Below are positions 4,885-64,000 of a DNA stretch of 64,000 nt, piece after piece. Location: the IMG/VR virus record IMGVR_UViG_3300050821_002957, positions 341,632-405,631 of that record; one strand, written 5' to 3'. Positions within the stretch are counted from its first letter, which is position 1. Every line of letters begins with the position of its first letter. Both the position numbers and the translations under genes were made by a program. The notes under the pieces are model-generated. The model saw only the letters and a program-made list of their open reading frames with translations. It was not told the origin of the DNA and ran no database searches.

Positions 4885-4920
4885 TTGACATTAGATGTAT
4901 CTAAATGCTAAGATTGGTTT
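4885..4920 (+). promoter_or_regulatory. sigma70-type promoter (leaderless) with operator-like palindrome
   Basis: TTGACA-18-TAAGAT-6 nt-ATG; TAGATGTATCTA at 4892-4903. Confidence 0.75.
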
Positions 4921-5883
4921 ATGGAAAACGTACTTGAACAGAACATCTTCGAGGCAGAAACGTTTGAATTTAAGCCTCTAAAGCGTACCGACATCCATCG
5001 TCCTTCGGCGATCAATCCTAGCGAATATCAATTTGTCGCTTACGAATTTCTTCCTGGTGGAGCATGGCAGTATCTTGCCGTTCAGCGAGAGATCATTCGT
5101 AACCATATGGCCCGGACGGGCGGCAACTATAGCGGACATGATCACGGCGGTAACTGCATGGTCTGCGGTAATGTTCTTGCCATCTACACCGTTCTTTTCT
5201 ATCACGAAAAATCCAACACCTACGTTCGCATGGGTGATATTTGCGCTCGGAAGGTTGAAATGGCCTTCGACAATTCGGCGTTCAACCGCTTTAAGGACAC
5301 CGTGAATGGCTGGCGCAGAGCCGTGGCTGGAAAGAACAAAGCAATGAACACGCTCATGGAGAAGGGCTATGGTGATGCCTGGGATCTCTTTGAGACTCGT
5401 GAGAAAAATTGGAAGGATTACAAATACGAAGAGAACACCATCTGCGATATCGTCGGCAAGCTGGTCAGATACGGGAACATTTCAGACAAGCAGATGAACT
5501 TCATCGGTCGTCTTTTAACTCAGATCGATGGTCGTGTCGTCATCGCCAAGAAACGTGCCGAAGAAAAGGCGTTGGCGGCTCCGGTTCCGACTGGCCGTTT
5601 CGTCATCGAAGGAAAGATCGTCTCTCGCCAGTACAAGAGCGACATCATGTACCCGGCTTTCAAGATTACCGTGAAGCATGTTTCTGGCTGGTGTGTCTAT
5701 GGCACGCTCCCGGCATCGCTCGAAGATGCTAAGGTTGGCGATTTTGTTACGTTCTCTGCCACCGTAGAAGTTTCTGACGGTGATCAAAAATTCGGTTTCT
5801 TCAGCCGTCCAGCGTGCGGTAAGATCCTCCCTGGACCCAGCGTAGATGACATTCTGACCGTGGCGTCGCAAGAGGTAGCGTAA
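4921..5883 (+). CDS. Hypothetical protein, Zn-binding N-terminus and probable OB-fold C-terminus
   Basis: CxxC...GxxC; C-terminal VTFSATVEVSDGDQKFGFFSRP. Confidence 0.6.
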   Translation: MENVLEQNIFEAETFEFKPLKRTDIHRPSAINPSEYQFVAYEFLPGGAWQYLAVQREIIRNHMARTGGNYSGHDHGGNCMVCGNVLAIYTVLFYHEKSNTYVRMGDICARKVEMAFDNSAFNRFKDTVNGWRRAVAGKNKAMNTLMEKGYGDAWDLFETREKNWKDYKYEENTICDIVGKLVRYGNISDKQMNFIGRLLTQIDGRVVIAKKRAEEKALAAPVPTGRFVIEGKIVSRQYKSDIMYPAFKITVKHVSGWCVYGTLPASLEDAKVGDFVTFSATVEVSDGDQKFGFFSRPACGKILPGPSVDDILTVASQEVA

Positions 5884-5926
5884 TACCTCTTGCGTTTTTT
5901 GAGAACACCATGATACAGTAGACATC

Positions 5927-6922
5927 ATGACGCTTCCGACATCGAAAACAGAATTTGCAGTCGTCTATTTCCCTTTTCAATGTAGTAACCTTCTTGCTTG
6001 TCACTCAAGCATCTTAAAGGACGCAGCACAAACTCACAACAGAATTGTCATTGCACTTCCTGTTCGCCGGATCTCACCATCAAAAGATTCTCCGTTGGAT
6101 TTTGTGACTCGCCAACAGATGATCCAACAACAATTTCAGAATGCTATTATTGTCCCGGTGGTAGATACCAAATATCCCCAGAACAAAGTTAAGGCGCTTG
6201 AAACTGCGGTCGCTGCTCCATTTTCAGAAATGCGTGGGAAGTGCGATTTGTACACCGATGTCAATTTTGCAAACCTGTATCGGGCGCATGGTGGGAAATG
6301 GCAATGTGCGGATCTGGCTCAGGATGTTTTCGTACAGGAAGCGGCGAATCGAAAACGAGTTCAATTCAATATCGGAATGGCACAGGATTTCAAATTGGCC
6401 GATGTTCAGCACGCCTACCGGATCGGCCTCATTAAAGGTCTGAACGACCAATTTCCAATCTCATGGACCACCGTCGATATTTGCATCAAGCGAGTGATCA
6501 ACGGTAAAACTTTTATTCTACTCGGTAAGAAACCAGGAGAGAATGGTTGGCGCTTTCCTGGTGGATTTAAAGATCGTGGCGACATGAGCTTCGAGATTGC
6601 TGTTATTCGTGAAGCCAGTGAAGAAATTCTTAAACCCGGCGTCAATCCAGTCAATACATTGATGTTCCCGGAATACATAGGCAGCAAGAACGTTGATGAC
6701 TGGCGCTACAAAGGTGAGATCGACGGCATCAACACGCTGTTCTATCAGGTCACGTTTATTGGCGAAGACGACGACATCAAAGCTGGGGACGATCTTGCAG
6801 AAGCCGAGTGGTTTGAGTTGACCAGAATTGATCCTCCTATTCTCGAAGGCGAACATTTGAATCTGTACAACATGCTTCTAGTGCATGAAGGAATGACACA
6901 TGAAAAATCCACTGGCAAATAA
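5927..6922 (+). CDS. NadM-like (degenerate) / Nudix ADP-ribose pyrophosphatase fusion
   Basis: DSPLDFVTRQQMI (NadM-like), TTVD, Nudix box FPGG...REASEE, AGDDLAEAEW. Confidence 0.8.
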   Translation: MTLPTSKTEFAVVYFPFQCSNLLACHSSILKDAAQTHNRIVIALPVRRISPSKDSPLDFVTRQQMIQQQFQNAIIVPVVDTKYPQNKVKALETAVAAPFSEMRGKCDLYTDVNFANLYRAHGGKWQCADLAQDVFVQEAANRKRVQFNIGMAQDFKLADVQHAYRIGLIKGLNDQFPISWTTVDICIKRVINGKTFILLGKKPGENGWRFPGGFKDRGDMSFEIAVIREASEEILKPGVNPVNTLMFPEYIGSKNVDDWRYKGEIDGINTLFYQVTFIGEDDDIKAGDDLAEAEWFELTRIDPPILEGEHLNLYNMLLVHEGMTHEKSTGK

Positions 6923-7292
6923 AGCCGACTGGACCCTTGTCGGTCACTTCGGAGTTGACGCTGGTCTCTGTTGGATTGGAGATCCATGTTACGTCCTTCA
7001 TACTTCCGAAATGAAAGACGGAAAAGACGTACCAACACCATTACCAGAGACACTCGGAAAAGACTGGAGTGCATTCTGCAATCTACTCGATGGTTCTTAT
7101 CCGACGTTGAAGAGCTTCAACTACGAGGCAGGCCATGAAGGTCTTGGGGTCTGTGTATCGACCGGCTTTGGTGACGGCACCTATCCAGTGTACGCTCTCA
7201 TTCAAGAAGAGGGCACCTGGGGCAAACGAGTAGCAGCGATCTTTATTGATTTTTTTGGATTGCTGGAAGATGGCGCTGAAGACGAAGATTGA
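6900..7292 (+). CDS. DUF4241-like hypothetical protein
   Basis: GVDAGLCWIGDPCY, STGFGDGTYPVY. Confidence 0.65.
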   Translation: MKNPLANKADWTLVGHFGVDAGLCWIGDPCYVLHTSEMKDGKDVPTPLPETLGKDWSAFCNLLDGSYPTLKSFNYEAGHEGLGVCVSTGFGDGTYPVYALIQEEGTWGKRVAAIFIDFFGLLEDGAEDED

Positions 7293-7293
7293 C

Positions 7294-7331
7294 TTGACAA
7301 TAGACACATCTTCCTGATAGGATCTAACTAA
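7294..7331 (+). promoter_or_regulatory. sigma70-type promoter
   Basis: TTGACA-18-TAGGAT; palindrome variant TAGACACATCTT in the spacer. Confidence 0.65.
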
Positions 7332-8555
7332 ATGAATCTACAAAATCCCAAATTGGTTGACAAAATCCACAAGACACCAACGAAAGTAGTTCTTTTCGTA
7401 ACAGGTGGTGGTCTGGAAATTTTCCAAACCTTGACTCATCGTGGCGGCGGCTCGGCTACGCTCCTGTCCGGGCTGATTCCGTATGACACTCAAGAGACCA
7501 TCGAATTGCTTGGTGGAGTCCCAGAAAAACTGGTCAGTGAGAAAACTACACGAGAGATGGCAATGGTGGCCTTCCAGCGTGCTCTGAAGCTCTCAAAAGG
7601 CGAATACCCAGTCATAGGCGTGGCGGCGTCGGCAGTGCTTCAGAAGACGCCGTATGAGCGTGAAGGTCGAAAGCATTTTGTCTATGCTGCACTCCAGACC
7701 GACACTAAGACGGTTTCCTGTGTTCTGGACCTACATGATGGTATTGCAGAACCAAAAGACACCGGACCAATTCCACCGGATCATGGTGTAGGATTGCGAA
7801 TCATGGAAGAAATGATCACAGCCAATTTGATTCTGAATTTGATTGCCGAAGGTTGTGGACTGGAAGAACGAATTACTCTTGGTTATGGTGTCGAAGACGA
7901 TCTGACCCGGCGTGAATCGACCTTGACCGGAATTTCGATCAACAAAATCATGAGTGGTCATCCAGTTTCGTTCGACTTGGGCAAAGACACCAAAAAAATT
8001 GAAACCGCCACATTCAGTTCGACTAGTTACCGAAACATTTTCCCAGGTCGATTCAATCCGATCCATGCTGATCATTGGGAGATGTGCGCTCTCGCCTGCG
8101 AACAATTTGGTTTCGTCGAATTTGAAATCTCCATTGGCAATGTCGAAAAACCCACATTGGATTTGATTTCTCTCGAAGAGACGCTGAAGCAATTCTGCCA
8201 AGAAAGAACGCCACCATTGCCAGTTTACTTCAGAGTGTGGGTGACCAATGCTCCCACTTTTGTCCAGAAAGCCGACATGTTTCCGGGCGCAACGTTCATT
8301 GTTGGCTATGACACAGCAAAACGTATTTGCGACCCAAAGTATGCCGGAAACATCGAAGAAGTAATGGAAGTGTTCAAAAAAAATGACGTTGATTTCCTGG
8401 TGTTCGGACGTGAACTGAATGGAGTCTATAAAGCTGATGTTAGTGAATTTCCGACTTCGTTTCGACAGATTGTTGTTACGAATACTGAGCCACGTCAGTA
8501 CTCAAATATCTCTTCTTCAGAGATCCGTCGCCGCACGTCAGAAGGGCATGAATGA
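7332..8555 (+). CDS. CinA/PncC-like domain fused to a Pof1-like NMN adenylyltransferase (HIGH-family) domain
   Basis: TGGG, GGGSATLL, VSEKTTREMA; FPGRFNPIHADH, APTFVQKADMFPGATFIVGYDT..RICDPKY, ISSSEIR. Confidence 0.75.
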   Translation: MNLQNPKLVDKIHKTPTKVVLFVTGGGLEIFQTLTHRGGGSATLLSGLIPYDTQETIELLGGVPEKLVSEKTTREMAMVAFQRALKLSKGEYPVIGVAASAVLQKTPYEREGRKHFVYAALQTDTKTVSCVLDLHDGIAEPKDTGPIPPDHGVGLRIMEEMITANLILNLIAEGCGLEERITLGYGVEDDLTRRESTLTGISINKIMSGHPVSFDLGKDTKKIETATFSSTSYRNIFPGRFNPIHADHWEMCALACEQFGFVEFEISIGNVEKPTLDLISLEETLKQFCQERTPPLPVYFRVWVTNAPTFVQKADMFPGATFIVGYDTAKRICDPKYAGNIEEVMEVFKKNDVDFLVFGRELNGVYKADVSEFPTSFRQIVVTNTEPRQYSNISSSEIRRRTSEGHE

Positions 8556-8721
8556 GCTAAAGGCTTTGATGTACGTCTACCGAAAGGAATGGAAAGCCTG
8601 TCGGTTAAAAGTTAAGGCAACAAATCGGCAAATGGTTTTGCTGAAGCATAAGTTGAGAAAAGAAATGTTCAGACAGAAAAGAATTCAGAATAGAATGGAG
8701 AGAAGACAAAATGCCAGCTAA
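8548..8721 (+). CDS. Small basic hypothetical protein
   Basis: Overlaps both neighbours in the operon. Confidence 0.45.
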   Translation: MNELKALMYVYRKEWKACRLKVKATNRQMVLLKHKLRKEMFRQKRIQNRMERRQNAS

Positions 8722-10246
8722 CACAGCATGGAGAATGCAAAACGGACTTGATGGCTTCAAGTATCCTCGTGGTTCGAGTGAGCGCATGATGCCGAAGCGC
8801 ACGGACGGCTACAAACCTTCGCACTGGATGTTCGAGGAAGACGGCGTGACCGAGTGTTATGACTACCTCACCAGCCGTGGCGGTATGTTTCAAGACCTGA
8901 CGATGTTTGGAGCACAGTCCATCGTCATGAAGTACTTCTTGGGATGTGTCGTAACCCCGGAACAAGTTCGACGTGCTCGCAAATTTTATAAGAGTTATTA
9001 CGGCATGGACGGCGTGTTCAACTACGAAGCGTGGATGGACATTGCGACTCGTCTCGAAGGTCGCTTGCCTCTAGAATTCTGGGCGCTGCCTGAAGGCATG
9101 AGCGGCATTCCAGTTCAGACGCCGATGATGGCCTACGTCAACACCGATCCGAAGCACGCCCATCTGTCTGGCTACGTCGAGCCGCTGACGTTCAAGGTGT
9201 GGAATACAATCACCGTGGCGTCGTTGTCACAGCACATCAAGAAAATCATCTATCAGTTCCTCGTCGAGACCGGCACGCCCGAAGACATCATTTGGAAGCT
9301 GCATGACTTCGGTTACCGTGGTGTTTCGAGCGAAGAGTCCGCTGAATTTGCTGGGGCCGCACACCTTCTGAATTTCTGGGGCAGCGACACCATTCCGGCT
9401 ATCGATCACATCAACGAATTTTACTCGGATGGTGTGTTCGACGAAGATGGTGACCCTACCTACATGCCTGCCTTCAGCGTCCGTGCCACAGAGCACAGCA
9501 TCATGACGCAGAATGGCCGCAATGGTGAGTCGGCCATCGTTAAGCGTATCCTTCAAAAGTGCCCGAATGGGATCATCGCAATGGTCGGCGATAGCTACAA
9601 CATCTTCGACTTCTCCAGCAAGATCATCGGAACTGAATTCCACACCGAAGTGATCGAGCGTGAAGGTATTGTTGTGATTCGCCCGGACAGCGGTGAACCG
9701 ATTCCGACGATGATGAAAGTGATGTGGGAACTCGGCGAAAAATTCGGCAAGACGGTCAATGACAAGGGCTACTACAATCTCGGCACAGGCAAGGGTCTGG
9801 GCAAGATCAAGGTGCTTCAGGGCGACAAGAACGACTACGATGCTGTCTATAACATGCTCCGTGCCTTCAAGGGCGCTCAGTGGTCGGCGGATAACATTGC
9901 AGCCTTCGGCATGGGTGGCGCACTGTTGCAGGCCAGCACTCGTGATACTCAGAAGATGGCCGTCAAGCTCTCTTCGCAGACTCGTAATGGCGTCTGGGAA
10001 GATATCTTCAAAGATCCGATCACCGATCCTGGCAAGGGTTCCAAGTATGGTCGCTTCGCTGTGACATACGAAGAGAATGCTGGTGTACGTCGTATGGTGA
10101 CCAGTCGTCTGACTCAGAATGGTTCGATTCCGAATGGCAATCTGATGCGGATGATTTCTCGCAACGGTTACCTCGCCGTCCATGACAAATTTGAAACGGC
10201 TCGTGCTCGTGCGGATGAGTGGATGCCGAAATCCAAAGCAGCTTAA
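8711..10246 (+). CDS. nadV: Nicotinamide phosphoribosyltransferase
   Basis: TDGYKPSH, LHDFGYRG, ATEHS, DSY, IRPDSG, FGMGGALLQ, RDT, KDPITDPGKGSK. Confidence 0.95.
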   Translation: MPANTAWRMQNGLDGFKYPRGSSERMMPKRTDGYKPSHWMFEEDGVTECYDYLTSRGGMFQDLTMFGAQSIVMKYFLGCVVTPEQVRRARKFYKSYYGMDGVFNYEAWMDIATRLEGRLPLEFWALPEGMSGIPVQTPMMAYVNTDPKHAHLSGYVEPLTFKVWNTITVASLSQHIKKIIYQFLVETGTPEDIIWKLHDFGYRGVSSEESAEFAGAAHLLNFWGSDTIPAIDHINEFYSDGVFDEDGDPTYMPAFSVRATEHSIMTQNGRNGESAIVKRILQKCPNGIIAMVGDSYNIFDFSSKIIGTEFHTEVIEREGIVVIRPDSGEPIPTMMKVMWELGEKFGKTVNDKGYYNLGTGKGLGKIKVLQGDKNDYDAVYNMLRAFKGAQWSADNIAAFGMGGALLQASTRDTQKMAVKLSSQTRNGVWEDIFKDPITDPGKGSKYGRFAVTYEENAGVRRMVTSRLTQNGSIPNGNLMRMISRNGYLAVHDKFETARARADEWMPKSKAA

Positions 10247-10255
10247 GGAAAACCA

Positions 10256-12160: not shown

Positions 12161-12161
12161 C

Positions 12162-13288: not shown

Positions 13289-13291
13289 TTT

Positions 13292-15431: not shown

Positions 15432-15716
15432 GTGTCAGAACAGAAAAGTGGAATCGAGGTCAAGGTCATTGATTGGGGCAACGATCAACGTGAAGTCGCC
15501 ATTCATTTCCTGGACCTAAATCAGATGCTCACCCTGAACCCGGCAGGCGCTCGAACATTTGCATTTCGTCTGATGGAGTGCGCCGATTTTCTTGAACCAC
15601 CATTCGCTGACGACTCTCAAAAATTGCTAGAAGATCCCAACGACAACTCAGAATCCGAACGTTTCTTTGGTCCCTATGAAGATGATGAGGAGGACGAAGC
15701 CGACGAAGGATATTGA
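15432..15716 (+). CDS. Acidic hypothetical protein
   Basis: ORF fills the gap. Confidence 0.5.
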   Translation: MSEQKSGIEVKVIDWGNDQREVAIHFLDLNQMLTLNPAGARTFAFRLMECADFLEPPFADDSQKLLEDPNDNSESERFFGPYEDDEEDEADEGY

Positions 15717-15759
15717 CACATCTATTGACATTGAAAAATAGATGTAGTAAAGTTGAGCT
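15713..15759 (+). promoter_or_regulatory. sigma70-type leaderless promoter with two palindrome variants
   Basis: TTGACA(15725)-17-TAAAGT-6-ATG. Confidence 0.7.
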
Positions 15760-15963
15760 ATGATTCCTGTTATGGAGATGCAAAAGACCGTATCGATTAC
15801 GGCGGAAGAAAAATGGAAGCAAGGCGGAATGGATCAGCAGATTCGTCTTGAAATGTTGGCGGTCATCGGTCAACCTCGTTGCTATGCCAGCGAGTCCTGG
15901 AAGAAGTTACCCCACGTCCTGAAACTCAATCTCAGTGCCCGAAAATGGACCCAAAAAAGTTGA
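15760..15963 (+). CDS. Small hypothetical protein
   Basis: Directly follows the promoter. Confidence 0.5.
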   Translation: MIPVMEMQKTVSITAEEKWKQGGMDQQIRLEMLAVIGQPRCYASESWKKLPHVLKLNLSARKWTQKS

Positions 15964-16008
15964 TGTAGCTACTTGACATTGGCGTCGTTCCAATGTTAAG
16001 ATACATCT
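15960..16008 (+). promoter_or_regulatory. sigma70-type leaderless promoter with palindrome variants
   Basis: TTGACA(15973)-18-TAAGAT-6-ATG; AAGATACATCTA overlaps the -10 box and start. Confidence 0.7.
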
Positions 16009-16341
16009 ATGAGATACGAAATCTGGACCAACGAGACGAACGATCCGGCCAGGGAATATTTTGGGTTTGACGGGTATCGTCCCGGCGCTCACATGAAGCT
16101 GGCTTATTCCAATCTGATCGCTTCCAATCCTGATGCTCACGATGCTGCACTTGAGCGCCTTTTCGAGAAGTTTAACATCGACCAACCGGCTGATTATAAA
16201 GCACATTCTCTTAGTGTCGGTGATGTGGTTGTGCTTATCGATTCCGGTGTCCGTACTGCATACGCCTGTGAATCGTGCGGTTGGAAGGCACTTTTGGTTT
16301 TCGATCCGACCTTGAAGAATCCGGCCTGGGGGACACGATGA
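16009..16341 (+). CDS. YodL-like domain protein
   Basis: LERLFEKFNIDQPADYKAHSLSVGDVVVL. Confidence 0.75.
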   Translation: MRYEIWTNETNDPAREYFGFDGYRPGAHMKLAYSNLIASNPDAHDAALERLFEKFNIDQPADYKAHSLSVGDVVVLIDSGVRTAYACESCGWKALLVFDPTLKNPAWGTR

Positions 16342-17010: not shown

Positions 17011-17013
17011 CCT

Positions 17014-29285: not shown

Positions 29286-32200
29286 ATGTCACTTTGGAAT
29301 AATCAAACCCCTCCGGTTCTGTACCCGGATGCTGTAGCAACGAACGCAGGTTGGGCACATCCCGTAACTGGTGAATTGCTCGTCTGTGTCACAGGTCTGT
29401 CCACATATAAGAATGAAGGCGCAGGCACACAGCTTGTCAATGCTCGAATCTTGGGCGCAAAAGCTCAGGGCGCAGATCCTATCGTCCACAAGAAAATCTT
29501 TGCTGCTGGCGACGTAATTGTTGTCGAAGCAATTTTCTTGGAGCCTGTCACAAAGACTGGCGGCACACCGACGATGGCAATCAACATCAACGGTAACTCT
29601 CGGACCTTTACCCAATTCACTGATCCGACCAATTTTGATGCAAAAACCAAGGACAAAGTAACTGGTTTCACGATCAGTGCTGGTGGTTCTGGATACTTGG
29701 TCGGTGATAAATTGACCTTCACTGGCGGTGGTGGTTCGAGCGCAGAAGCAGTTGTAGCAACAGTTTCAAGCGGCGCAATCACAGGCATCACATTGCTTGC
29801 TGGTGGTTCTGGATACACTTCGGCTCCGACAGTCGGCGGCGGAACTGGAACGGGAGCAACTATCGTAGCAAAACTCGGTTCACTTGCAAACGGCCCTGGA
29901 ACGAATCGTTGGCTCTTCGGATATACAGTTGCATCTAACGAAACCGCAACCTCGGCACAGATTATTTTCCCATCTAGCATCACTGGTGTCTTCGATACCA
30001 CTGAGGATGCTCTTGGAGCTTCGGCAGCAGGCACAGCCGTTATTGGAACTGGAGTAACTTCCGTAACAGTAAGCGCTGGTGGTTCTGGTTATACATCGGC
30101 ACCGAAAGTTAGCTTTACTGGCGGCACTCCAACGACACCAGCAACAGCAGTAGCAGTTCTTGATCAAAGTGTTGGTTCTATCGCAGTTACCGCAGGTGGT
30201 TCTGGATACACCAGCGCACCCACGGTTACCTTTACAGGTGGCGGTGGATCTAGCTCAGTCGCAACAGCAGTTCTTGCATCGAGTGGTTCAATCAAATCGA
30301 TCACGATCACAAACGGTGGTACAGGCGGAACAAACGGCACTGGTGTAGCAGTTTCGATCACTGGTGGCGGCGGCACTGGAGCAACAGCAACAGCAACAAT
30401 CGCAGGCGGTGTTGTCACAGTGATCACCATAACTGCTGGTGGTTCTGGATACACTTCGGCACCTACTGTCTCGGTAACGGGTCAGGCTGGCTCGCCGGTT
30501 TATGCTCCAGTCATTGGCAAGGTAGTCGCATCAGTCACAGTTGGCACCCCAGGAAGCGGATACACTTCGGCTCCGACCATTGGTTTCACTGGTGGTTCTG
30601 GAAGCGGCGCAACAGCAACGGCTACAATGGCAACATTGACTGATGTACTTGCTGTAACTGTCACGAACCCTGGTGTAGGCTATACGGGCACACCAACCGT
30701 TTCGTTCACTCCTCAGGGCGGTGGCGCAGCAGCAACAATCTCGGTACTTGGTGGAACTGAAGGTTCTGGCAATGTAACCGGCGTAACCATCACAAATGGT
30801 GGAACACTTTATACTACAGCCCCTTCAGTCACTACGACAAGCGGTGGTTCTGGTGTCACCTTCACAGCAGTTTTGACGGGTGGTGTTGTAACCAGCGTAA
30901 CTTTCAGTGGAACTGGTACTGGATACACAAACGGTGACGCTTTGATCTTCACTGGTGGTTTGGCAGGTAGTGGCGCAACGGCAACGGCAACGACCGCAGG
31001 CGCAGTTGAATCGGTCACTATCACAAACGGTGGCTCTGGATACTGGAATGTTCCTACAGTCGCCTTCAGTGGTGGCTCTGGAACTGGTGCAGCAGGCACC
31101 GCAGTAGTCAGCCACGGCAAAGTAACAAGTGTGACGATGACCAACCCAGGAACAGGTTATACTGGTGCTCCTACGGTTGCATTCACAGAGCCATCATCGG
31201 CAGTGACCAATCCAACTTTCAACGGAACACCTTCCGCAGCCGGATACACTGTAAATGGTGTCGCACCGACAATCACAGCAGCAGCAATCTCTGGTTACCA
31301 AACCGGAACAACCTTCGTTACAAACAACATTGTGACCTTGACTCTTACGACAAGCGTCCCGGTTTACGTAACTGGTTCTCCGTACATCACGCTTGAAATC
31401 AATAGCAACCCAGAAACGGCTTCGTATGTAAATGGCAGCGGTACAACTACTTTGATCTTCCAGTACGAAGTTCAAGCAAGTGACTTCTGCACGGCAACGG
31501 AATTTACCATCACTTCCCCAGTTGTTCTCAACAGTGGAACGATGACAGACTTCCAGGGCAATGCTTTGGTCTTGACCTTTACGGCACCTACTGTCACGGC
31601 AGTTGTTGTCAACAGTCCGCTGGTTCCTAGCTTCACAGCAGCAGCGGTAACTGGTGGTCCTGCATACACGACATCCGGCACGGTGACGATCACTTTGACG
31701 GCGAATGTCAACGCAACAGTAGTAACGACAAACGGTACGCCTTATATCGAATTGTACATCGGAAGCAGTGTCCAGCACGCTACCTATGCTTCTGGTACAG
31801 GCACAACGAGCTTGGTCTTCACTTATACAGTGGGTTCGGGCGACGTAGCTACACCAAGAGCATTCTCGATTGGTTCACAAATCTTCTTGGCAGGCGGCAC
31901 GATTCAAAATGCTTCGGCAGTCAACTTCCCAGCATTCTTTACGGCACCTGACACTTCGGAAGATACGGTCAATTCTGGTTCGATTGCAGCATGGGCAAGC
32001 TCGGCTATGAGTGGTTTCAACTCTGGCACTGCTTACATCACTGGAAACAACATCACATTGACGCTTACAGCAAGCGAAAATGCAACCGTCAGCACAGCAA
32101 ACGGTACGCCTTATATCGAATTGTACATCGGAAACGCAACACGTTTTGCAATCTACACTTCAGGTTCGGGAACAACAGCCTTGGTATTCAAGTACACGGC

Positions 32201-32345
32201 TCTTTCGACCGACTCGGCAGTAGCAAAGACCTTCTCTACCGGAGACCAGATCCTATTCAATGGCGGCTCTATCGTAGACGGTTCTTCAAATCACTTCCCT
32301 GAGGACTTCATCGTCCCAGCAACATCAACCATCACTGTCAACTAA
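29286..32345 (+). CDS. Large Gly/Thr-rich repeat virion (fibre/decoration) protein
   Basis: MSLWN start; many (T/S)xGGSGYTSAPTV repeats; C-terminal Ig-like repeats with GSGTTxLxFxY. Confidence 0.75.
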   Translation: MSLWNNQTPPVLYPDAVATNAGWAHPVTGELLVCVTGLSTYKNEGAGTQLVNARILGAKAQGADPIVHKKIFAAGDVIVVEAIFLEPVTKTGGTPTMAININGNSRTFTQFTDPTNFDAKTKDKVTGFTISAGGSGYLVGDKLTFTGGGGSSAEAVVATVSSGAITGITLLAGGSGYTSAPTVGGGTGTGATIVAKLGSLANGPGTNRWLFGYTVASNETATSAQIIFPSSITGVFDTTEDALGASAAGTAVIGTGVTSVTVSAGGSGYTSAPKVSFTGGTPTTPATAVAVLDQSVGSIAVTAGGSGYTSAPTVTFTGGGGSSSVATAVLASSGSIKSITITNGGTGGTNGTGVAVSITGGGGTGATATATIAGGVVTVITITAGGSGYTSAPTVSVTGQAGSPVYAPVIGKVVASVTVGTPGSGYTSAPTIGFTGGSGSGATATATMATLTDVLAVTVTNPGVGYTGTPTVSFTPQGGGAAATISVLGGTEGSGNVTGVTITNGGTLYTTAPSVTTTSGGSGVTFTAVLTGGVVTSVTFSGTGTGYTNGDALIFTGGLAGSGATATATTAGAVESVTITNGGSGYWNVPTVAFSGGSGTGAAGTAVVSHGKVTSVTMTNPGTGYTGAPTVAFTEPSSAVTNPTFNGTPSAAGYTVNGVAPTITAAAISGYQTGTTFVTNNIVTLTLTTSVPVYVTGSPYITLEINSNPETASYVNGSGTTTLIFQYEVQASDFCTATEFTITSPVVLNSGTMTDFQGNALVLTFTAPTVTAVVVNSPLVPSFTAAAVTGGPAYTTSGTVTITLTANVNATVVTTNGTPYIELYIGSSVQHATYASGTGTTSLVFTYTVGSGDVATPRAFSIGSQIFLAGGTIQNASAVNFPAFFTAPDTSEDTVNSGSIAAWASSAMSGFNSGTAYITGNNITLTLTASENATVSTANGTPYIELYIGNATRFAIYTSGSGTTALVFKYTALSTDSAVAKTFSTGDQILFNGGSIVDGSSNHFPEDFIVPATSTITVN
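31729..32133 (+). repeat. 36-bp exact direct repeat between duplicated Ig-like domains
   Basis: CAAACGGTACGCCTTATATCGAATTGTACATCGGAA at 31729-31764 and 32098-32133. Confidence 0.8.
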
Positions 32346-45484: not shown

Positions 45485-45539
45485 CCAATAGATACATTAA
45501 CACAAATTTGCCAATTGTCAATGATGATGGTATAATTGT

Positions 45540-54968: not shown

Positions 54969-54986
54969 TTTGAGCTAAATACGTAC

Positions 54987-56585: not shown

Positions 56586-56596
56586 AATTTTTCATT

Positions 56597-57055
56597 TCAT
56601 CGTGCTAATGGACACGGCGATTTGAACTTCAGAAACGCCTGCTCCCACGGAGTGTATAACGAAACCAAAGTTCTATCGGTTGTGGACCAGAGAACCTCAG
56701 GAGTTTGTAATACACGACCAGCAGTATTAGCTATGTCGTCGTACAGGCGCTCAGGGATGACGATGCCGATGCTCGATACCGCATAGTTCATACCCGGCTC
56801 ACGGAACAATGCACACGGATAGGGATTGTTCTCGTCCAAAAACAACGTCGCAAATGCATCCGACAAAGCCTTGTGATCACCGGCATGAAGGATGATGGTC
56901 GTCTTGTGGTTCCGAACGAAATCCACCATCGTAGCAAATTGAGCACTTGCCGTGTTTTTGGTCACGCTTGCCCAGATCTCATCCTTGGCGTGATCGGCCT
57001 GAATTCCATTGTGGATACCAGCCCAGTACATGTTGTTGAATGCGTAGAATCTCAT
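56597..57055 (-). CDS. PTH2 (peptidyl-tRNA hydrolase II)-like phage protein
   Basis: GIQADHA, KTTIILHAG, FREP. Confidence 0.5.
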   Translation of the reverse strand: MRFYAFNNMYWAGIHNGIQADHAKDEIWASVTKNTASAQFATMVDFVRNHKTTIILHAGDHKALSDAFATLFLDENNPYPCALFREPGMNYAVSSIGIVIPERLYDDIANTAGRVLQTPEVLWSTTDRTLVSLYTPWEQAFLKFKSPCPLAR

Positions 57056-57211
57056 GTCGAAAACCAGAATAACACACACCAGTTCTCAATGTCAAGATGC
57101 ATCTAATTGAAATGTGAATCAACCAGTAGATGGAACATGTGCTGGGTCATCCAATCGCTGAAGAAAATTTTCGATTCCAGACATACGCCAATAGTATGCT
57201 ATGATGGTGAC

Positions 57212-58060: not shown

Positions 58061-58072
58061 AACGTACCGCTA

Positions 58073-58705
58073 ATGAAATGGCATCAACATCAATTAGAAA
58101 CTCGGGACTCCTTAACCGAGTATTTTACACGTTATCTTTCGAGGGAGTTGAAGAAAATCAATCCGGCATTTCAGTTCATGCGGATTGAAACCCCAATTCT
58201 ACTTCCGTTCATTGCAGACAAAGGAAAACTTCAGACCGTTCAGATTCGTCTCGACAACGAAGAACTTGCACTACGGCAAAACACGGTCACCGGAGCCTAC
58301 GAAGCAAGCAAAGATATTCTCTCTGGAAAAGTTGGACCGAAACAACGACTCCCCATTGTCGTCTGGCAGCATGGAAAAGTTTTTGAAAAATTGAACGGCA
58401 ATCTCCAAGAACATTATCACTTGGAATATCAAATTCTTTTTTCAAAAACCACCGGAATGCCATACGATCCAGTCATCGCTCAGGCGTGCGGCAACATGGT
58501 TCACAAACAGTGCGGCCCAATCAATGAAGATGCAAAACCAGAATCCTATCATGCATACGTCGAAGATAATAAGGATCTCCTGATTTCGATGCGCCAACGT
58601 GACGATTTTTGGGCCGGTAAAAACATTGAAGTGATTTTGCACATGGATCAATGTACGTTGGCGGCGATTCGACACGAAAAAACGTTAGCCTCACATCGCT
58701 CTTGA
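58073..58705 (+). CDS. Class II aminoacyl-tRNA synthetase (GlyRS)-like core, degenerate
   Basis: IETPILLP, LALRQNT, LPIVVWQHGKVF, HLEYQ. Confidence 0.6.
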   Translation: MKWHQHQLETRDSLTEYFTRYLSRELKKINPAFQFMRIETPILLPFIADKGKLQTVQIRLDNEELALRQNTVTGAYEASKDILSGKVGPKQRLPIVVWQHGKVFEKLNGNLQEHYHLEYQILFSKTTGMPYDPVIAQACGNMVHKQCGPINEDAKPESYHAYVEDNKDLLISMRQRDDFWAGKNIEVILHMDQCTLAAIRHEKTLASHRS

Positions 58706-58755
58706 CATCCAAAGCACAGCGGTGTTAAAGTAGGTACGTCTACTATAGGAGAAAT

Positions 58756-59430
58756 ATGGCAACTTTCAAAACAGATATTTGGAATCGTATGGGCCGGTAC
58801 AATAACATCGGCGACGACATCTCGACAAACGTCTTCAATCTGGTTATTACATTCACCGTGATGTTTGGGTTAGCCCTTTACGGTGTTCTGGCGGATACTT
58901 TCTCGACCACGAAATTCGGCTTCTGGACTTCGATCTTAATCCTGATTGGAACTTTTGGCGGCTGTTTTTTTGCAGCGATGGATTTTACACCTGCGAAACT
59001 CGTCGGATTGAGCTTGATCGCAGGTGGTCTCGGTACGCTATCGGGATCGTTTTATCACCAATTCACTAAAGGTTCCATTCTGAATGTCATCGTAATGGTC
59101 GCCGCTATTACAACGATATTAGGTGCAATCGGAACTCTTATCCCCCGAAGCCTTGCCAACTGGGGAAGTACATTGCTTACGCTTCTGACAGCATTAATCA
59201 TCGGTCAATTGGTGTGTGTTCTCTTTCTGCCTACGTATCAAGCACACACATTTCTGGACTGGTGTGGTGTTCTGCTCTTTAGTGCCTACATCGTCTTCGA
59301 TTTTAACCGTGCTCAATACGTCGAGAAGACAGTCGATAATGCTATGGACTGCGGCATCAGCATCTTCCTGGACATTGCCAATCTGCTTATCTACTTGATG
59401 GAACTCTTCGGACAAAAAGACAATGACTAG
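58756..59430 (+). CDS. Bax inhibitor-1/YccA family membrane protein
   Basis: About 7 TMs; LFSAYIVFDF, SIFLDIANL. Confidence 0.8.
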   Translation: MATFKTDIWNRMGRYNNIGDDISTNVFNLVITFTVMFGLALYGVLADTFSTTKFGFWTSILILIGTFGGCFFAAMDFTPAKLVGLSLIAGGLGTLSGSFYHQFTKGSILNVIVMVAAITTILGAIGTLIPRSLANWGSTLLTLLTALIIGQLVCVLFLPTYQAHTFLDWCGVLLFSAYIVFDFNRAQYVEKTVDNAMDCGISIFLDIANLLIYLMELFGQKDND

Positions 59431-59707
59431 TCATCATGCGCCGCCGATCCGGGCAACTTTGACGATGGCTGTAAACGAGAAGCCACCGGAGCTTCTTGCT
59501 ACATCGACGATTAGCGATATTTCGTTGACAGAGCACGCCAATACGTCGGTCAAGGCATTGGCGATTGTCGGCTTCCGGGGATCGGTGACATTTCAGGCTA
59601 CAAAAAACGACGGCAACATGATCTGGGGCGCAGTGGTGTCTTTCACTGATGACCTACCAACCGGCACATGGTTGAATACTCATACTGCATTGAAAGGGAA
59701 AGAATGA
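59423..59707 (+). CDS. Hypothetical protein
   Basis: Operonic ORF. Confidence 0.45.
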   Translation: MTSHHAPPIRATLTMAVNEKPPELLATSTISDISLTEHANTSVKALAIVGFRGSVTFQATKNDGNMIWGAVVSFTDDLPTGTWLNTHTALKGKE

Positions 59708-60939
59708 CCTTCAACGATACACTCAAGTACAAACTCGCCGTTTTTAGTTATCCAAATCGAGCCGCCGTCCTGGATCATCTATTCTGCGTCAACGGCAATG
59801 GTTATGAATTTGACGAGACCGGAGAAATGGTCGAACGTGGTGGCAGCAGTGGAAGTACTTTAAACGAACTCGTTGCCATCGAACATTGGGTCGGTGCAGG
59901 CAAACACAAAAAGCCGATTGATGACATGGAAGAAATACCGAAAGAACTTCGTCGTCACTTTCTTTCTATCACTGTTCCGGCTGACATCGAAGAGCGTCTG
60001 GACCGAGTGAACTATGATCATTGGTATCCGATGTCGGTAGGTTACAATTCTCTTGAAAAATTGCCTGATAACATTCCGGCAGATTGGCTTAACGCCGCTT
60101 GGGAATGCGCTAACCTGATCATTCTTACTCCACTCGACATCAACTTGGAGAAAGAAGCCAAATCGACCAGCTACCAGTTCCTTGACATGCCGATCTTCGA
60201 CAAAGATGGATACAAAGTCATCGGTCGTGAGAAAAACACTCCTGCGGAAGCTCTAAAAAAGGCACGGAAAAGTGTCATTGAAACTCGACATCGTGTCTTC
60301 AACATCGCTGACCAAGCGCTGAAACGCATGAAAGAGCAATTTCCGAATCATAAGTTCGAGCGCAATCCGACTCCGACATTTGATGCAACCCGTAAGATGC
60401 CGAAACAGGGAATCGTTCCGTGGCCGCTGGATGAATCACCGGCTGATATTGATCTCTGCATCGAACCATTCAAGAAGGCTCTCAAGTTTGCCTATTCAAT
60501 GCGCCGACGCAACCAGACGAAAGACATTCCGTATCATGGCCTGCCTCTTGGTCGTGACGAACGTGCCTGTTCCTTTTCACCAGAGCATCGTTTCGTAGTC
60601 GAGCAAATGGACTACGACAAATACGATCAAGGCCGAGATGCTCTTGAAGTAATCCTGTGCTGCATGGCCCAAATTTGCATCGAACAGGGACGCCGGGACG
60701 CCAAGAAGAAAATCATGGAACCACTCAATCGTCATTTCGAGATGGAAAAATTCCGCAAGATAGCAGACGAACGTGCCAAGACGGATCTCGTTTTTGCCGC
60801 TCGTCTACGAATCGTCGATCAGATGCAAGCTGGCGAACAAATCACCATCAACGACAACGATCCAAATGAAGTCCAGGCTCTCAAAGAACTTCGTGAGGGT
60901 ATGGCGAGAATGACGGCAGACTTGGATGTTAATGCATGA
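59704..60939 (+). CDS. Hypothetical protein
   Basis: Long ORF; VLDHLFCVNGNGY. Confidence 0.65.
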   Translation: MTFNDTLKYKLAVFSYPNRAAVLDHLFCVNGNGYEFDETGEMVERGGSSGSTLNELVAIEHWVGAGKHKKPIDDMEEIPKELRRHFLSITVPADIEERLDRVNYDHWYPMSVGYNSLEKLPDNIPADWLNAAWECANLIILTPLDINLEKEAKSTSYQFLDMPIFDKDGYKVIGREKNTPAEALKKARKSVIETRHRVFNIADQALKRMKEQFPNHKFERNPTPTFDATRKMPKQGIVPWPLDESPADIDLCIEPFKKALKFAYSMRRRNQTKDIPYHGLPLGRDERACSFSPEHRFVVEQMDYDKYDQGRDALEVILCCMAQICIEQGRRDAKKKIMEPLNRHFEMEKFRKIADERAKTDLVFAARLRIVDQMQAGEQITINDNDPNEVQALKELREGMARMTADLDVNA

Positions 60940-62051: not shown

Positions 62052-62052
62052 T

Positions 62053-62349: not shown

Positions 62350-62418
62350 CTACTTCATGCGGCCCATAAAAGTAAATGCATCTTGACTTTGATACATCGA
62401 AGATGATATTCTTGATTC

Positions 62419-63435
62419 ATGAAATCGTTCAGCGAGTCTTTTAGCTTTGAATCCTACAGCATTCTGACCAAACGAGGATTGGAGCCGTCCGAATATCAAA
62501 AGCTCTTCGCCGACTTGCTCATTCCGGCTTTTGGTACGTTCTTTTTTGAACTAGTCGAAGCTGGCCGGATCGTTCCTGCGGACACATTGGGCCGGGAAAT
62601 CCGTCTGATTGCATATTGGAATCGGGCAGTCACAAAGGACGAGTATTACGAACATTCGATCCATGACATCGCCTGGAAAATTCTGCATCATCCGATGTTC
62701 ATGAGTGGTATGCTTTTCGAGAAAGAAGAAAATGGCCTGAAAAAGGGCTATGATCTCTTCATCAGCCAAATGGACGCAGGCAACATTCCGTTTACATCGT
62801 CAGACAACGAAGACAACATCACTGGCGAAAATTTTCAATTAGAGATCAAGAATTGGGTGCCGATGTTCTACCAATACGGCAAAGGAACTGAACATGTTCC
62901 AGCTACTCAATTGGCTCCGGTGAATCCCATCGATACTGTCGAAGTGAAGTTTGAATCCGGCGAAGTTTTGGTTGCCGACTGGTTCCGCATCGACGAATTC
63001 ACCAGCAAAACTAAGAATGACGCCAGCATCAACAACGACCGTGGCATTCGGGAAGCGGTCAACCACTATGCGGCGCTTGGGTTTGTTTCGGTCTTCGTCG
63101 GTAATTCCTGTCCGAACGTCTGGAAGCGTGGCAATACCGTCATCGTTGGTCGCTCTGCGGATTGTGACGTTGACATCGAGAATGGTCAGGAAATGTCAGT
63201 CTGCACCGATTTGTGGTGGGTCACGATGATCGACCGCAAGCAACTGGAGCGCATGGTCGGCGTGGAAATCGCTGCAAAGTACATCGCCGATCACGACACG
63301 GACATTCTTAACCTGGAGCCAGGAACCTACACTGTCTCGTACACCCCAAAATACCACAATTTTGGCGATCATTTCAAATCGGAATCATTCGACATGACCG
63401 GAATTGAAGCATTCTTCGCCCTTGAGAAAAAGTAG
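62419..63435 (+). CDS. Hypothetical protein
   Basis: VFVGNSCP, VCTDLWW; follows TTGACT-18-TATTCT-6-ATG. Confidence 0.65.
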   Translation: MKSFSESFSFESYSILTKRGLEPSEYQKLFADLLIPAFGTFFFELVEAGRIVPADTLGREIRLIAYWNRAVTKDEYYEHSIHDIAWKILHHPMFMSGMLFEKEENGLKKGYDLFISQMDAGNIPFTSSDNEDNITGENFQLEIKNWVPMFYQYGKGTEHVPATQLAPVNPIDTVEVKFESGEVLVADWFRIDEFTSKTKNDASINNDRGIREAVNHYAALGFVSVFVGNSCPNVWKRGNTVIVGRSADCDVDIENGQEMSVCTDLWWVTMIDRKQLERMVGVEIAAKYIADHDTDILNLEPGTYTVSYTPKYHNFGDHFKSESFDMTGIEAFFALEKK

Positions 63436-63479
63436 ATACATCTATTGACTTCCAATTTGAAAGTTGGTAAGATGTATTC
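63433..63479 (+). promoter_or_regulatory. Leaderless sigma70-type promoter with palindrome
   Basis: TAGATACATCTA, then TTGACT-17-TAAGAT-6-ATG. Confidence 0.75.
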
Positions 63480-63986
63480 ATGAGCGAACAACTACAGAAC
63501 GAAGACGTAAAACTCACTGAAGCCCGGTCATTGGCTTTCATGTTGGCAGGCAATGCCACGGTTACTTTACGAAGCGTCAGAACCGGCACTCGTTACACGT
63601 TCAAGATCCAAAAGGCAAAACCCAGCAAAGATCCGCTCAAGCCGAAGCAACCGGACACTTGGTTCGTGAATCTGTTGACTGGTCCCAACAATGAGGCCGA
63701 CTATCGCTACATGGGCATGATTCGCAATGGTGTCTTCAATGTCGCCTTCACGTACAAGGATCGTAATTCAGGTCTTCGCAAACCGACCGGCTTTACTGTC
63801 ACGACGCCTTCGGTAGTTGCTTTCATGTGGACACTCCGCAAGCTGAACGAAGCAGCGACCAACTTCGGCGTCGAAATATTTCACTCTGGCACCTGCGGTC
63901 GCTGCGGACGTAAGCTGACGGTGCCTGAGAGCATCGAGACTGGTCTAGGACCGGAATGCGCTGAGAAAGGTTTTGGTGGTTTCTAG
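63480..63986 (+). CDS. DUF6011-like Zn-finger protein
   Basis: AGNATVTL, LTGPNN, CGRCGRKLTVPESIETGLGPEC. Confidence 0.75.
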   Translation: MSEQLQNEDVKLTEARSLAFMLAGNATVTLRSVRTGTRYTFKIQKAKPSKDPLKPKQPDTWFVNLLTGPNNEADYRYMGMIRNGVFNVAFTYKDRNSGLRKPTGFTVTTPSVVAFMWTLRKLNEAATNFGVEIFHSGTCGRCGRKLTVPESIETGLGPECAEKGFGGF

Positions 63987-64000
63987 TAGATACATCTATT

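What the first reader, a model, noticed from the sequence alone, without database searches (positions are those of the whole stretch)
4892..63998. Dispersed palindromic operator TAGAT-RY-ATCTA overlapping sigma70-type promoters
Copies with perfect arms occur at 4892-4903, 63433-63444 and 63987-63998. Variants occur at 7301, 15713, 15739, 15960, 15998, 45489, 57094, 62373, 62389 and 63469. All those noticed abut or overlap a -35 box, spacer or -10 box (the last is cut by the window edge), often in pairs. Inference: a binding site for a dimeric regulator controlling a regulon of early genes, including the NMNAT-NAMPT operon. A repressor-type regulon is unusual for a T4-like phage and could reflect early-gene shut-off, a host-state-sensing switch or a carrier state.
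Basis: partly seen in the sequence, partly recalled or inferred. Interest (0 to 1): 0.72.

Follow-up and report, generated by a model that had tools for sequence, protein, structure and literature searches.

The report
Palindromic operator on phage early promoters
A 12-base palindrome (TAGAT-RY-ATCTA) sits beside or inside about fifty strong host-type early promoters of a 405-kb T4-like soil phage and its relatives, and it is most likely the docking site of a phage-encoded repressor that turns the early genes off.

Summary
TAGATRYATCTA occurs perfectly 3 times in the window (0 expected) and 17 times in the 405,631-bp phage genome (0 in the control). Of these, 15 are intergenic and 16 touch a TTGAC -35 box. 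The site has fixed positions. Most copies directly abut the -35 box (centre -41.5, 17-bp spacer). Fewer lie inside an 18-bp spacer. A few lie over the -10 box and the start site. Both halves are equally conserved, and the flanking spacers are not. The same arrangement is kept in at least ten related soil-phage contigs (42-52% GC).

The promoters have near-consensus cores. Their ATG lies exactly 6 nt after the -10 box, so the mRNAs are predicted to be leaderless. The best reading is an operator for a symmetric phage-encoded repressor that shuts off early genes; the phage has no detectable AsiA or MotA. The best candidate binder is a conserved 120-aa ribbon-helix-helix protein (genome 5637-5999, outside the window). 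This matches the CopG and Arc precedents, but binding is untested.

A carrier state or host-state sensing has no support. Verdict: a new variant of a known kind.

The parts
4892..4903 (+). Perfect box inside the 18-bp spacer (class B) of promoter TTGACA(4885)-18-TAAGAT(4914). The ATG at 4921 lies 6 nt after the -10 box. A strong terminator-like hairpin at 4844-4871 lies just upstream.
4921..6922 (+). Genes driven by the 4885 promoter: a 320-aa protein of unknown function (PHROG families without annotation) and a 331-aa NUDIX protein.
7301..7312 (+). Box with 2 mismatches inside the 18-bp spacer (class B) of promoter 7294-7323. The ATG at 7332 lies 8 nt after the -10 box.
7332..10246 (+). NMNAT-like cytidylyltransferase (407 aa) and NAMPT (511 aa; NAPRTase and NAMPT_N domains), downstream of the 7294 promoter.
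15713..15724 (+). Box with 2 mismatches directly abutting the -35 box (class A) of promoter 15725-15753. There is a weak second copy at 15739 in the spacer. The leaderless ATG at 15760 opens a 67-aa ORF.
15960..16009 (+). Two boxes on one promoter (15973-16002). One lies 1 nt upstream of the -35 box (15960-15971). The other covers the -10 box TAAGAT through the A of the ATG (15998-16009, 1 mismatch). The ATG at 16009 opens a 110-aa ORF.
45489..45500 (+). Box with 2 mismatches 7 nt upstream of the -35 box of promoter 45508-45536 (TTGCCA-17-TATAAT). The leaderless ATG at 45543 opens a 254-aa ORF.
57094..57105 (-). Box with 1 mismatch that overlaps the -35 box of the minus-strand promoter 57095-57066. 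That promoter drives the minus-strand gene ending at 56597. Its orthologue in relative G004 carries a box-like site in the spacer instead.
58731..58742 (+). Box with 2 mismatches that overlaps the end of the -10 box and the start site of promoter 58702-58731. The gene 58756-59430 here has a leader with a ribosome-binding site.
62373..62400 (+). Two boxes flanking the -35 hexamer (62383-62388) of promoter 62383-62412. The leaderless ATG at 62419 opens a 338-aa ORF.
63433..63444 (+). Perfect box abutting the -35 box (class A) of promoter 63445-63473. The leaderless ATG at 63480 opens a 168-aa DUF6011 protein. A weak box-like stretch lies at 63469 over the -10 box.
63987..63998 (+). Perfect box after the stop codon of the DUF6011 gene, cut by the end of the record. 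The near-identical copy at genome 1447 continues with TTGACA, a -10 box and an ATG.

Best explanation
The palindrome is an operator: a binding site for a symmetric, sequence-specific protein, placed where it competes with RNA polymerase on strong host-sigma70 early promoters. At infection, the host polymerase fires about 50-70 near-consensus promoters (TTGACA, 17-18 bp, TG-extended -10). Their ATG sits at the predicted start site, so the mRNAs would be leaderless. A phage protein then accumulates, occupies the 12-bp sites and blocks sigma region 4 and polymerase access. The sites lie at -47 to -36 abutting the -35 box, inside the spacer, or over the -10 box and +1. This shuts off the early set, which includes NAD salvage, a Ku-like protein and many small unknown proteins, as the gp55/gp33-type late programme (CTAAATA promoters) takes over. 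The best candidate binder is a conserved 120-aa ribbon-helix-helix protein at genome 5637-5999, outside the window. By analogy with CopG, two dimers would each read one half of the palindrome. Shown: the motif, its enrichment, its fixed positions, its symmetry, its conservation across a clade, the quality of the promoter cores, and the presence and conservation of the RHH protein. Inferred: binding, repression rather than activation, timing, and that the start site is the A of the ATG.
For: Enrichment: 3 versus 0 in the window and 17 versus 0 in the genome. 15 of 17 perfect copies are intergenic and 16 of 17 lie next to TTGAC. Positions relative to the first base of the -35 box: -12 in 22 promoters, -13 to -16 in 10, +5 to +9 in 13, and over the -10 box/+1 in 4. 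Both halves are equally conserved (G3 and C10 in 37 of 38 sites). The centre is AC/GT in 31, GC in 7 and AT in none. Outside the box and the core elements the promoters are unrelated: mid-spacer identity is 33%. Upstream boxes go with 17-bp spacers (25 of 28) and spacer boxes with 18-bp spacers (8 of 10); Fisher p = 1.3e-4. Eighteen bp is just enough to fit a whole box between the -35 box and the TG of the extended -10 box. Box-bearing promoters have the best cores: -35 match 5.6-5.7 of 6, and a TG extension in 34 of 38 against 12 of 23 without a box, p = 0.002. This fits a brake better than an activator. The architecture is the same in relatives G001-G006, L182, L184, L186 and L187 at 42-52% GC. 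No AsiA was found, MotA_activ was found only below threshold, and no HTH_3 or MerR was found. The RHH protein matches Pfam RHH_1 in 28 of 33 homologues, all at weak E-values (best 1.8e-4). Its model has an extended N-terminal segment followed by two helices, then a helical hairpin, at pLDDT 82. Its strand (D8, K10, L12-L15) and the start of helix B (R36-F39, R41, R42) are invariant. It is 57-88% identical across the clade, while neighbouring proteins are 35-55% identical. It is present in every contig that covers its region. It lies downstream, on the same strand, of box-controlled early genes. It has no conserved toxin partner. Precedent: CopG binds a 13-bp pseudo-symmetric element overlapping a -35 box, one dimer per half, and keeps polymerase off (PMC2724298). 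Arc reads TAGA boxes through strand residues that include an Arg two residues before a Pro, as here (PMC12645479).
Against: There is no binding or expression data. The centre at -41.5 is also the classic position of class II activators and of lambda cI at PRM. The RHH assignment is below Pfam's cut-off, and Foldseek gave no significant match. The RHH gene has no box of its own; it has a conserved TATATACC element and a ribosome-binding site. I could not annotate all ~600 genes, so another DNA-binding protein may have been missed. A ParB-like HTH protein sits under a box promoter. The host is unknown, so a host factor cannot be excluded.
Confidence: 0.55

Rival explanations
1. The factor is an activator, or a dual regulator. 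Bound at -41.5 next to the -35 box, it contacts sigma region 4 or the alpha subunit and boosts upstream-box promoters, as lambda cI does at PRM or a class II activator does. The same protein represses the smaller set with the box in the spacer or over the -10 box.
For: The dominant position is exactly -47 to -36, with zero spacing to the -35 box in 22 promoters. An A-tract lies just upstream of the box, where an alpha-subunit contact would fit. The two position classes are distinct.
Against: Upstream-box promoters already have consensus -35 boxes and TG-extended -10 boxes. Promoters that depend on an activator usually lack a good -35 box (general knowledge). The offset varies (-10, -13, -15, -16, -19), which breaks helical phasing. 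RHH proteins are mostly repressors (general knowledge; PMC2724298).
Confidence: 0.2
2. The box is bound by a host transcription factor, so the phage ties its early genes to a host state.
For: The promoters use the host sigma70 polymerase. T4-like cyanophages are known to carry host NtcA sites (from memory). No binder has been shown. The box resembles the outer arms of the NsrR-type inverted repeat (from memory, not tested).
Against: An exact scan of 185,579 species genomes for box+TTGAC gave 91 hits, below my rough estimate of about 140 chance hits. None had the promoter arrangement apart from two chance cases, and no genome had a cluster of sites. The box is identical across phages of 42-52% GC, which probably infect different hosts. 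A conserved phage RHH with invariant DNA-reading residues is available.
Confidence: 0.13
3. The binder is the phage's ParB-like HTH protein (genome 272202-273104, minus strand). It would act like KorB of plasmid RK2, a ParB-family global repressor that binds a short palindrome at many promoters and regulates its own gene.
For: The protein matches HTH_ParB above the cut-off. Its gene lies behind a promoter with the box in an 18-bp spacer, which would give autoregulation.
Against: It is only 30-32% identical to the one homologue found, in L186. It is absent from G001-G004 and from G006 (79% complete), all of which carry boxes. At the matching place in G003 the same promoter drives a different gene.
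Confidence: 0.07
4. No separate factor exists. The palindrome is part of the promoter itself (an UP-like element read by polymerase), or a repeated promoter cassette spread by recombination, like the PeSL cassettes of T4-type phages.
For: The box is tightly coupled to the -35 box. T4-type genomes are known to shuffle early-promoter cassettes (PMC2839356, listed).
Against: The box is symmetric, works in either orientation, and occurs at three different places relative to the core elements. 23 of 67 otherwise similar promoters lack it. The sequence between the conserved blocks is unrelated, so these are not recent copies. UP elements are A/T-rich and not palindromic (general knowledge).
Confidence: 0.05

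Closest known systems
CopG repressor and its 13-bp pseudo-symmetric element at promoter Pcr of plasmid pMV158 (ribbon-helix-helix)
   Same: A 12-13-bp (pseudo)palindrome lies at or over the -35 box. Two RHH dimers bind, one per half. Repression works by keeping polymerase off the promoter (PMC2724298).
   Different: CopG controls one promoter, its own operon. Here about 50 dispersed promoters carry the site. The candidate protein has an extra C-terminal helical hairpin and is not encoded behind a box of its own.
P22 Arc/Mnt and the Pant operator
   Same: A phage RHH repressor reads TAGA boxes with its beta-strand and binds as a dimer of dimers (PMC12645479). From memory, its operator lies between the -35 and -10 boxes of a strong early promoter. 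The strand pattern ends in Arg-x-Pro in both proteins.
   Different: The Arc operator is 21 bp with wider half-site spacing, at a single locus. No sequence homology beyond the fold class was shown here.
Anti-CRISPR-associated (Aca) repressors and the early-gene regulatory sequences of archaeal viruses
   Same: Very strong early promoters of anti-defence genes carry inverted repeats that overlap the promoter. A small virus-encoded repressor binds them and damps expression after the first burst. One motif marks a set of small early genes (PMC9410906, PMC6765145, PMC11065993).
   Different: Aca proteins are mostly HTH or wHTH and usually sit in the operon they control. The regulon here is far larger, lies in a T4-like phage, and is not tied to known anti-CRISPR genes.
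KorA/KorB global regulon of plasmid RK2 (from memory)
   Same: One mobile element has many promoters. 12-13-bp palindromic operators lie at fixed positions, just upstream of the -35 box or over the -10 box.
   Different: That system is a plasmid, with HTH and ParB-family proteins. The ParB-like protein of this phage is poorly conserved and absent from relatives.
T4 early-to-middle switch (AsiA/MotA) and T4-type early promoter cassettes (PeSL)
   Same: The phage lineage is the same. The task is the same: silence strong sigma70 early promoters and move on. Early promoters precede many small, variable genes (PMC2988021, PMC2839356).
   Different: T4 does this by remodelling sigma, with AsiA blocking -35 recognition and MotA reading a non-palindromic box at -30. 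No AsiA or MotA is detectable here, the -35 box is kept, and the extra element is a palindrome.

Membership tests
Repressor operator overlapping a sigma70 promoter (generic) | Sequence-specific site far above chance and confined to promoters | tested here: met
   17 versus 0 in the genome; 15 of 17 intergenic; 16 of 17 next to TTGAC.
Repressor operator overlapping a sigma70 promoter (generic) | Dyad symmetry with both halves conserved, independent of orientation | tested here: met
   the mirrored positions have equal information. There is only a weak orientation bias of the centre (22 versus 9, p = 0.03).
Repressor operator overlapping a sigma70 promoter (generic) | Position within the polymerase footprint | tested here: met
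   -47 to -36, the spacer, or the -10 box/+1.
Repressor operator overlapping a sigma70 promoter (generic) | Protein binding, and lower transcription when the site is bound | not testable with these tools
The RNA run was uninformative.
Ribbon-helix-helix (CopG/Arc/MetJ) regulator, for the candidate protein at genome 5637-5999 | N-terminal beta-strand followed by two helices; match to the RHH profile | tested here: inconclusive
   RHH_1 scores 16.6-17.6 bits against a cut-off of 20.5. 28 of 33 homologues match at E <= 0.1. The AF2 model has an extended residue 8-16 segment and helices 17-30 and 36-49. Foldseek gave only local, non-significant matches to HicB3, ParD and NikR RHH domains.
Ribbon-helix-helix (CopG/Arc/MetJ) regulator, for the candidate protein at genome 5637-5999 | Binds a short (pseudo)palindrome or repeats as a dimer of dimers | not testable with these tools
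   Only an analogy with CopG and Arc is available.
Type II antitoxin of RHH type | Conserved adjacent toxin gene | tested here: not met
   The downstream neighbours differ between relatives: a GIY-YIG endonuclease, small unknown ORFs, or nothing.
Aca-type anti-CRISPR-associated repressor | Encoded in the same operon as the controlled anti-defence genes, and autoregulated through a site in its own promoter | tested here: inconclusive
   The RHH gene lies on the same strand downstream of box promoters; in L187 it is the third gene after one. Its own upstream region has no conserved box. No known anti-CRISPR gene was identified.
T4 middle promoter (MotA/AsiA sigma appropriation) | MotA box at -30 replacing the -35 box; MotA and AsiA genes present | tested here: not met
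   The -35 box TTGACA is retained. No AsiA was found, and MotA_activ scored only 14 bits, below its cut-off.
UP element (alpha-subunit contact) | A/T-rich, non-palindromic, at -59 to -38 | tested here: not met
   The box has invariant G and C positions and dyad symmetry, and it also occurs in the spacer. The separate A-tract upstream of the box could be an UP-like part.
T4-like phage (Straboviridae/Kyanoviridae-type core) | gp43-type polymerase, gp23 capsid, gp25, prohead protease, gp55-like sigma and gp33-like coactivator | tested here: met
   (41% identity to cyanomyovirus gp43).

The most novel reading that the evidence does not exclude
A clade of huge (about 370-405 kb) T4-like soil phages has no sigma-remodelling switch of the T4 kind. 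Instead it runs its early programme with a classical operator-repressor regulon. One ribbon-helix-helix protein reads a 12-bp palindrome on about 50 dispersed promoters. This happens in a system where both early (sigma70) and late (gp55-type CTAAATA) transcripts are built to start at the AUG, and where the phage brings its own IF3, release factor and deformylase.
Probability: 0.35. Interest if true: 0.78.

Novelty: new variant of a known kind. Interest (0 to 1): 0.64.

Why it matters
T4 is the textbook case of a phage that reprogrammes the host polymerase by modifying and remodelling it, not by operators. Most distant T4-like phages lack AsiA and MotA, and how they end early transcription is an open question. 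A single dispersed operator with a conserved small repressor would be a simple answer, and it can be tested directly. The motif also has a practical use. It marks the early gene set of an uncultivated phage clade, about 40 mostly unknown small proteins plus NAD salvage and a Ku-like protein. That is where host-takeover and anti-defence functions are usually found. Finally, the promoter geometry predicts leaderless mRNAs for both temporal classes, which bears on the unknown host and on why the phage carries translation factors.

Tried and rejected
- Public reads: one soil metatranscriptome holds the phage. It gave only three contigs (58910-59203 and 59644-59872), away from any promoter, so there is no start-site information.
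- Host regulon: an exact scan of all species genomes for box+TTGAC gave a chance-level number of hits and no promoter-like contexts. A two-hit 'Thermoplasmatales' contig was a repeated coding sequence.
- Many viral-contig hits were a conserved coding sequence in unrelated low-GC phages.
- An RNA hairpin is ruled out: with a 2-nt centre the palindrome cannot fold, and upstream-box copies lie upstream of the start site.
- No Rfam family and no tRNA occur in the window.
- No AsiA, MotA, HTH_3 or MerR was found in the genome.
- A ParB-like HTH protein was considered as binder and demoted.
- Foldseek and a PDB profile search of the RHH gave no significant hit.
- A conserved TATATACC upstream of the RHH gene was tested as a promoter class. 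It occurs only twice in the genome.
- An ESM Atlas look-up of the phage IF3 gave mixed phyla, so the host was not identified.
- The literature holds no report of this sequence as an operator.

Full report
**Where the window lies.** The window is the last 64 kb of a 405,631-bp virus record that CheckV rates as complete. The source is a soil metagenome. The phage is a distant T4-like phage:
- Its family-B polymerase is 41% identical to gp43 of cyanomyoviruses.
- The genome encodes a gp33-type late coactivator, gp25 and the T4 prohead protease.
- It encodes one Sigma70_r2 protein whose sequence, by my reading, resembles T4 gp55.
- Relatives show gp23 and the T4 capsid assembly protease next to homologous genes.

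Contigs of 370 and 375 kb carry close homologues of its genes, so the size is real for this clade. Synteny with relative G002 runs from the end of the record into its start. A contig from the probable source run extends 2,248 nt past the window end. The record is therefore circularly permuted rather than truncated.

**The observation.**
- TAGATRYATCTA is perfect at 4892, 63433 and 63987, with none expected.
- With up to 2 mismatches there are 20 sites, against 4.8 expected.
Two of them (15739 and 63469) are weak, with 3 mismatches. One more site, at 58731, was missed.
- Genome-wide there are 17 perfect copies, against 0 for the reversed pattern, and 37 with up to 1 mismatch, against 1.
- About 90% of the genome is coding, yet 15 of 17 perfect copies are intergenic. 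16 of 17 lie next to TTGAC, against 9% of random windows.

So the motif is real, non-random and confined to promoters.

**Anatomy.** Sixteen promoters are in perfect register and give this consensus:
- an A-tract;
- TAGATaCATCTA;
- TTGACa;
- a 17-bp spacer ending in TGgTA (a TG-extended -10 box);
- six bases;
- ATGA.

If the -10 box occupies -12 to -7, the box covers -47 to -36, with its centre at -41.5.

Among 151 TTGAC-N16-18-TAnnnT candidates, boxes with up to 2 mismatches start at these offsets from the first base of the -35 box:

| Offset | Number of promoters |
|---|---|
| -12 | 22 |
| -13 to -16 | 10 |
| -10 | 2 |
| +5 to +9 (inside the spacer) | 13 |
| over the -10 box and +1 | 4 |

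Upstream boxes go with 17-bp spacers (25 of 28) and spacer boxes with 18-bp spacers (8 of 10), p = 1.3e-4. Eighteen bp is the shortest spacer that holds a complete box between the -35 box and the TG of the extended -10 box. That looks like selection to keep both elements intact.

The two halves are equally conserved, with G3 and C10 present in 37 of 38 sites. The centre is AC/GT in 31 sites, GC in 7 and never AT. Between the conserved blocks the promoters are unrelated (33% identity), so these are not recent copies of a cassette.

**Leaderless architecture.**
- 67 sigma70-like promoters have the ATG of an ORF of at least 40 codons 5-8 nt after the -10 box, and 45 of them at exactly 6 nt. The reversed genome gives 4. 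This places the A of the ATG at the expected start site.
- 38 of the 67 carry the box.
- The commonest upstream 7-mer in the genome is CTAAATA (46 observed against 4 expected). This is the late-promoter type of T4-like cyanophages, as far as I recall.
- 22 of its 79 copies are followed after exactly 5 nt by an ATG. For a T4-type late promoter this again puts the start site on the ATG.

Leaderless design is thus general in this phage, not specific to the box. It is inferred from geometry only.

**Conservation.** An exact scan of IMG/VR for box+TTGAC found several unrelated coding hits. It also found a set of contigs with the full architecture. I fetched six viral contigs (G001-G006; 16-167 kb; 42-51% GC; proteins 35-80% identical to the window's phage) and four metagenome loci. 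Every one has the same box, at the same offsets, on leaderless promoters, and the reversed controls give 0-1. Orthologous genes keep a box even when its position shifts. The DUF6011 gene has an upstream box in G000, G004, L182 and L184. The gene at window 56597-57055 has the box over its -35 box, while its G004 orthologue has a box-like site in the spacer.

**Controlled genes.**
- In the window: the NUDIX cluster, the NMNAT-NAMPT cluster, two DUF6011 paralogues and several small ORFs.
- Elsewhere: a Ku-like end-binding protein, HD phosphohydrolases, and DUF7007, YodL-like, DUF2958 and DUF5658 proteins. Most of the rest have no family.

This is the profile of an early, host-takeover gene set.

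**Who binds.**
- No HTH_3, MerR or AsiA match exists, and MotA_activ reaches only 14 bits.
- A weak RHH_1 match led to a 120-aa ORF at genome 5637-5999 with a clear strand-helix-helix pattern.
- It has 62 homologues at 57-88% identity. JGI names them CopG/Arc/MetJ regulators.
- 28 of 33 homologues hit RHH_1 at weak E-values (best 1.8e-4).
- The strand residues and the start of helix B are invariant.
- The AF2 model (pLDDT 82) shows the RHH unit plus a C-terminal helical hairpin, which could join dimers.
- The protein is better conserved than its neighbours, and it is present wherever its region is covered.
- It has no conserved toxin partner.
- It lies downstream, on the same strand, of box-controlled genes.

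Its invariance matches the invariance of the box across the clade.

CopG gives a direct precedent. A 13-bp pseudo-symmetric element over a -35 box is bound by two dimers, one per half, and polymerase is excluded (PMC2724298). Arc reads TAGA boxes with strand residues that include an Arg placed as in this protein (PMC12645479).

A rival candidate is a ParB-like HTH protein behind a spacer-box promoter. It is only 30-32% identical to its one homologue. It is absent from five box-bearing contigs, one of them 79% complete.

**Direction of control.** I favour repression, for three reasons:
- Box-bearing promoters have the best cores, with a TG extension in 34 of 38 against 12 of 23, p = 0.002.
- The offset varies.
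- The site can lie in the spacer or over the -10 box.

The position at -41.5 would also suit an activator, so a dual role is kept as the main rival. A host factor cannot be excluded. However, no species genome shows the composite site in a promoter context or in clusters.

**Comparison with known systems.** In mechanism this is closest to CopG, to Arc, and to Aca-type control of strong early anti-defence promoters (PMC9410906, PMC6765145, PMC11065993). In layout it is closest to the RK2 KorA/KorB regulon. It is not the T4 AsiA/MotA switch, not an UP element and not a PeSL cassette. The searchable literature has no report of this sequence as an operator. I therefore rate it a new variant of a known kind: a classical operator regulon in a phage lineage known for a different strategy.

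**Limits.**
- There are no binding, expression or start-site data.
- Gene calls are my own crude ones.
- Only part of the proteome was screened for DNA-binding domains.
- The relatives are fragments of one clade, so co-occurrence of the box and the RHH gene is not independent evidence.

Noticed in passing
whole genome G000; in the window e.g. 14018, 15760, 16009, 45543, 49818, 62419, 63480: 67 sigma70-like promoters place the ATG of an ORF 5-8 nt (45 at exactly 6 nt) after the -10 box, against 4 in a reversed-genome control. This predicts leaderless mRNAs for a large early gene set, with or without the palindrome.
   Followed up: yes
whole genome G000; in the window e.g. 19863 (minus strand), 43497, 48278, 54975: CTAAATA is the most enriched upstream 7-mer (46 observed against 4 expected), so it is probably the gp55-type late promoter. 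22 of its 79 copies are followed after exactly 5 nt by an ATG, so many late genes also look leaderless.
   Followed up: partly
G000:127026-127565 (minus strand) and elsewhere outside the window: The phage encodes a full IF3 (IF3_N + IF3_C), an RF-1/PCRF release factor, peptide deformylase and PTH2. The IF3 gene has CTAAATA 10 nt before its ATG. In E. coli, IF3 is known (from memory) to disfavour leaderless mRNAs, so its role in a phage built on leaderless genes is puzzling.
   Followed up: partly
G000:5637-5999 (plus strand), with L182, L184, L186 and L187: The conserved RHH gene is preceded in three phages by a shared TATATACC element about 40 nt before the ATG and by a ribosome-binding site, not by a sigma70 -35 box. 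TATATACC occurs only twice in the genome, so its promoter class is unclear.
   Followed up: partly
G000:272202-273104 (minus strand): A ParB-like HTH protein (301 aa) lies behind a promoter with the box in an 18-bp spacer and a long leader. It is poorly conserved and absent from the relatives sampled.
   Followed up: yes
G000:60665-61585 (plus strand; L076:3665-4585): A Ku-like DNA-end-binding protein (306 aa) is expressed from a leaderless promoter with the box in the spacer. It may protect the genome ends early in infection.
   Followed up: no
window 63480-63986 and G000:997-1446: There are two paralogous DUF6011 proteins, each behind a perfect upstream box. The last 108 nt of the record are 97% identical to 1353-1460. 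The record end joins its start: synteny with G002 runs across it, and a contig of the probable source run extends 2,248 nt beyond it.
   Followed up: partly
window 29650-31700, inside ORF 29286-32345: The 1019-aa ORF without a Pfam match contains at least eight copies of a roughly 35-40-nt coding repeat (GCTGGTGGTTCTGGATACAC...), spaced 111-624 nt apart. It is therefore a protein of repeated modules.
   Followed up: no
window 4844-4871: A strong terminator-like hairpin (12 pairs followed by a T-run) lies directly upstream of the 4885 promoter. It would insulate the NAD-salvage cluster from upstream transcription.
   Followed up: no
G000:188658-188669: One perfect box overlaps a CTAAATA late motif on the opposite strand, followed by 5 nt and the ATG of a 65-aa ORF. 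The same site could therefore sit on a divergent early/late promoter pair. This may be chance.
   Followed up: no
G000:6027-6662 (plus strand): A GIY-YIG homing-endonuclease-like gene lies directly after the RHH gene in G000 and in L182, but not in the other relatives. It is a mobile insertion next to the candidate regulator.
   Followed up: no
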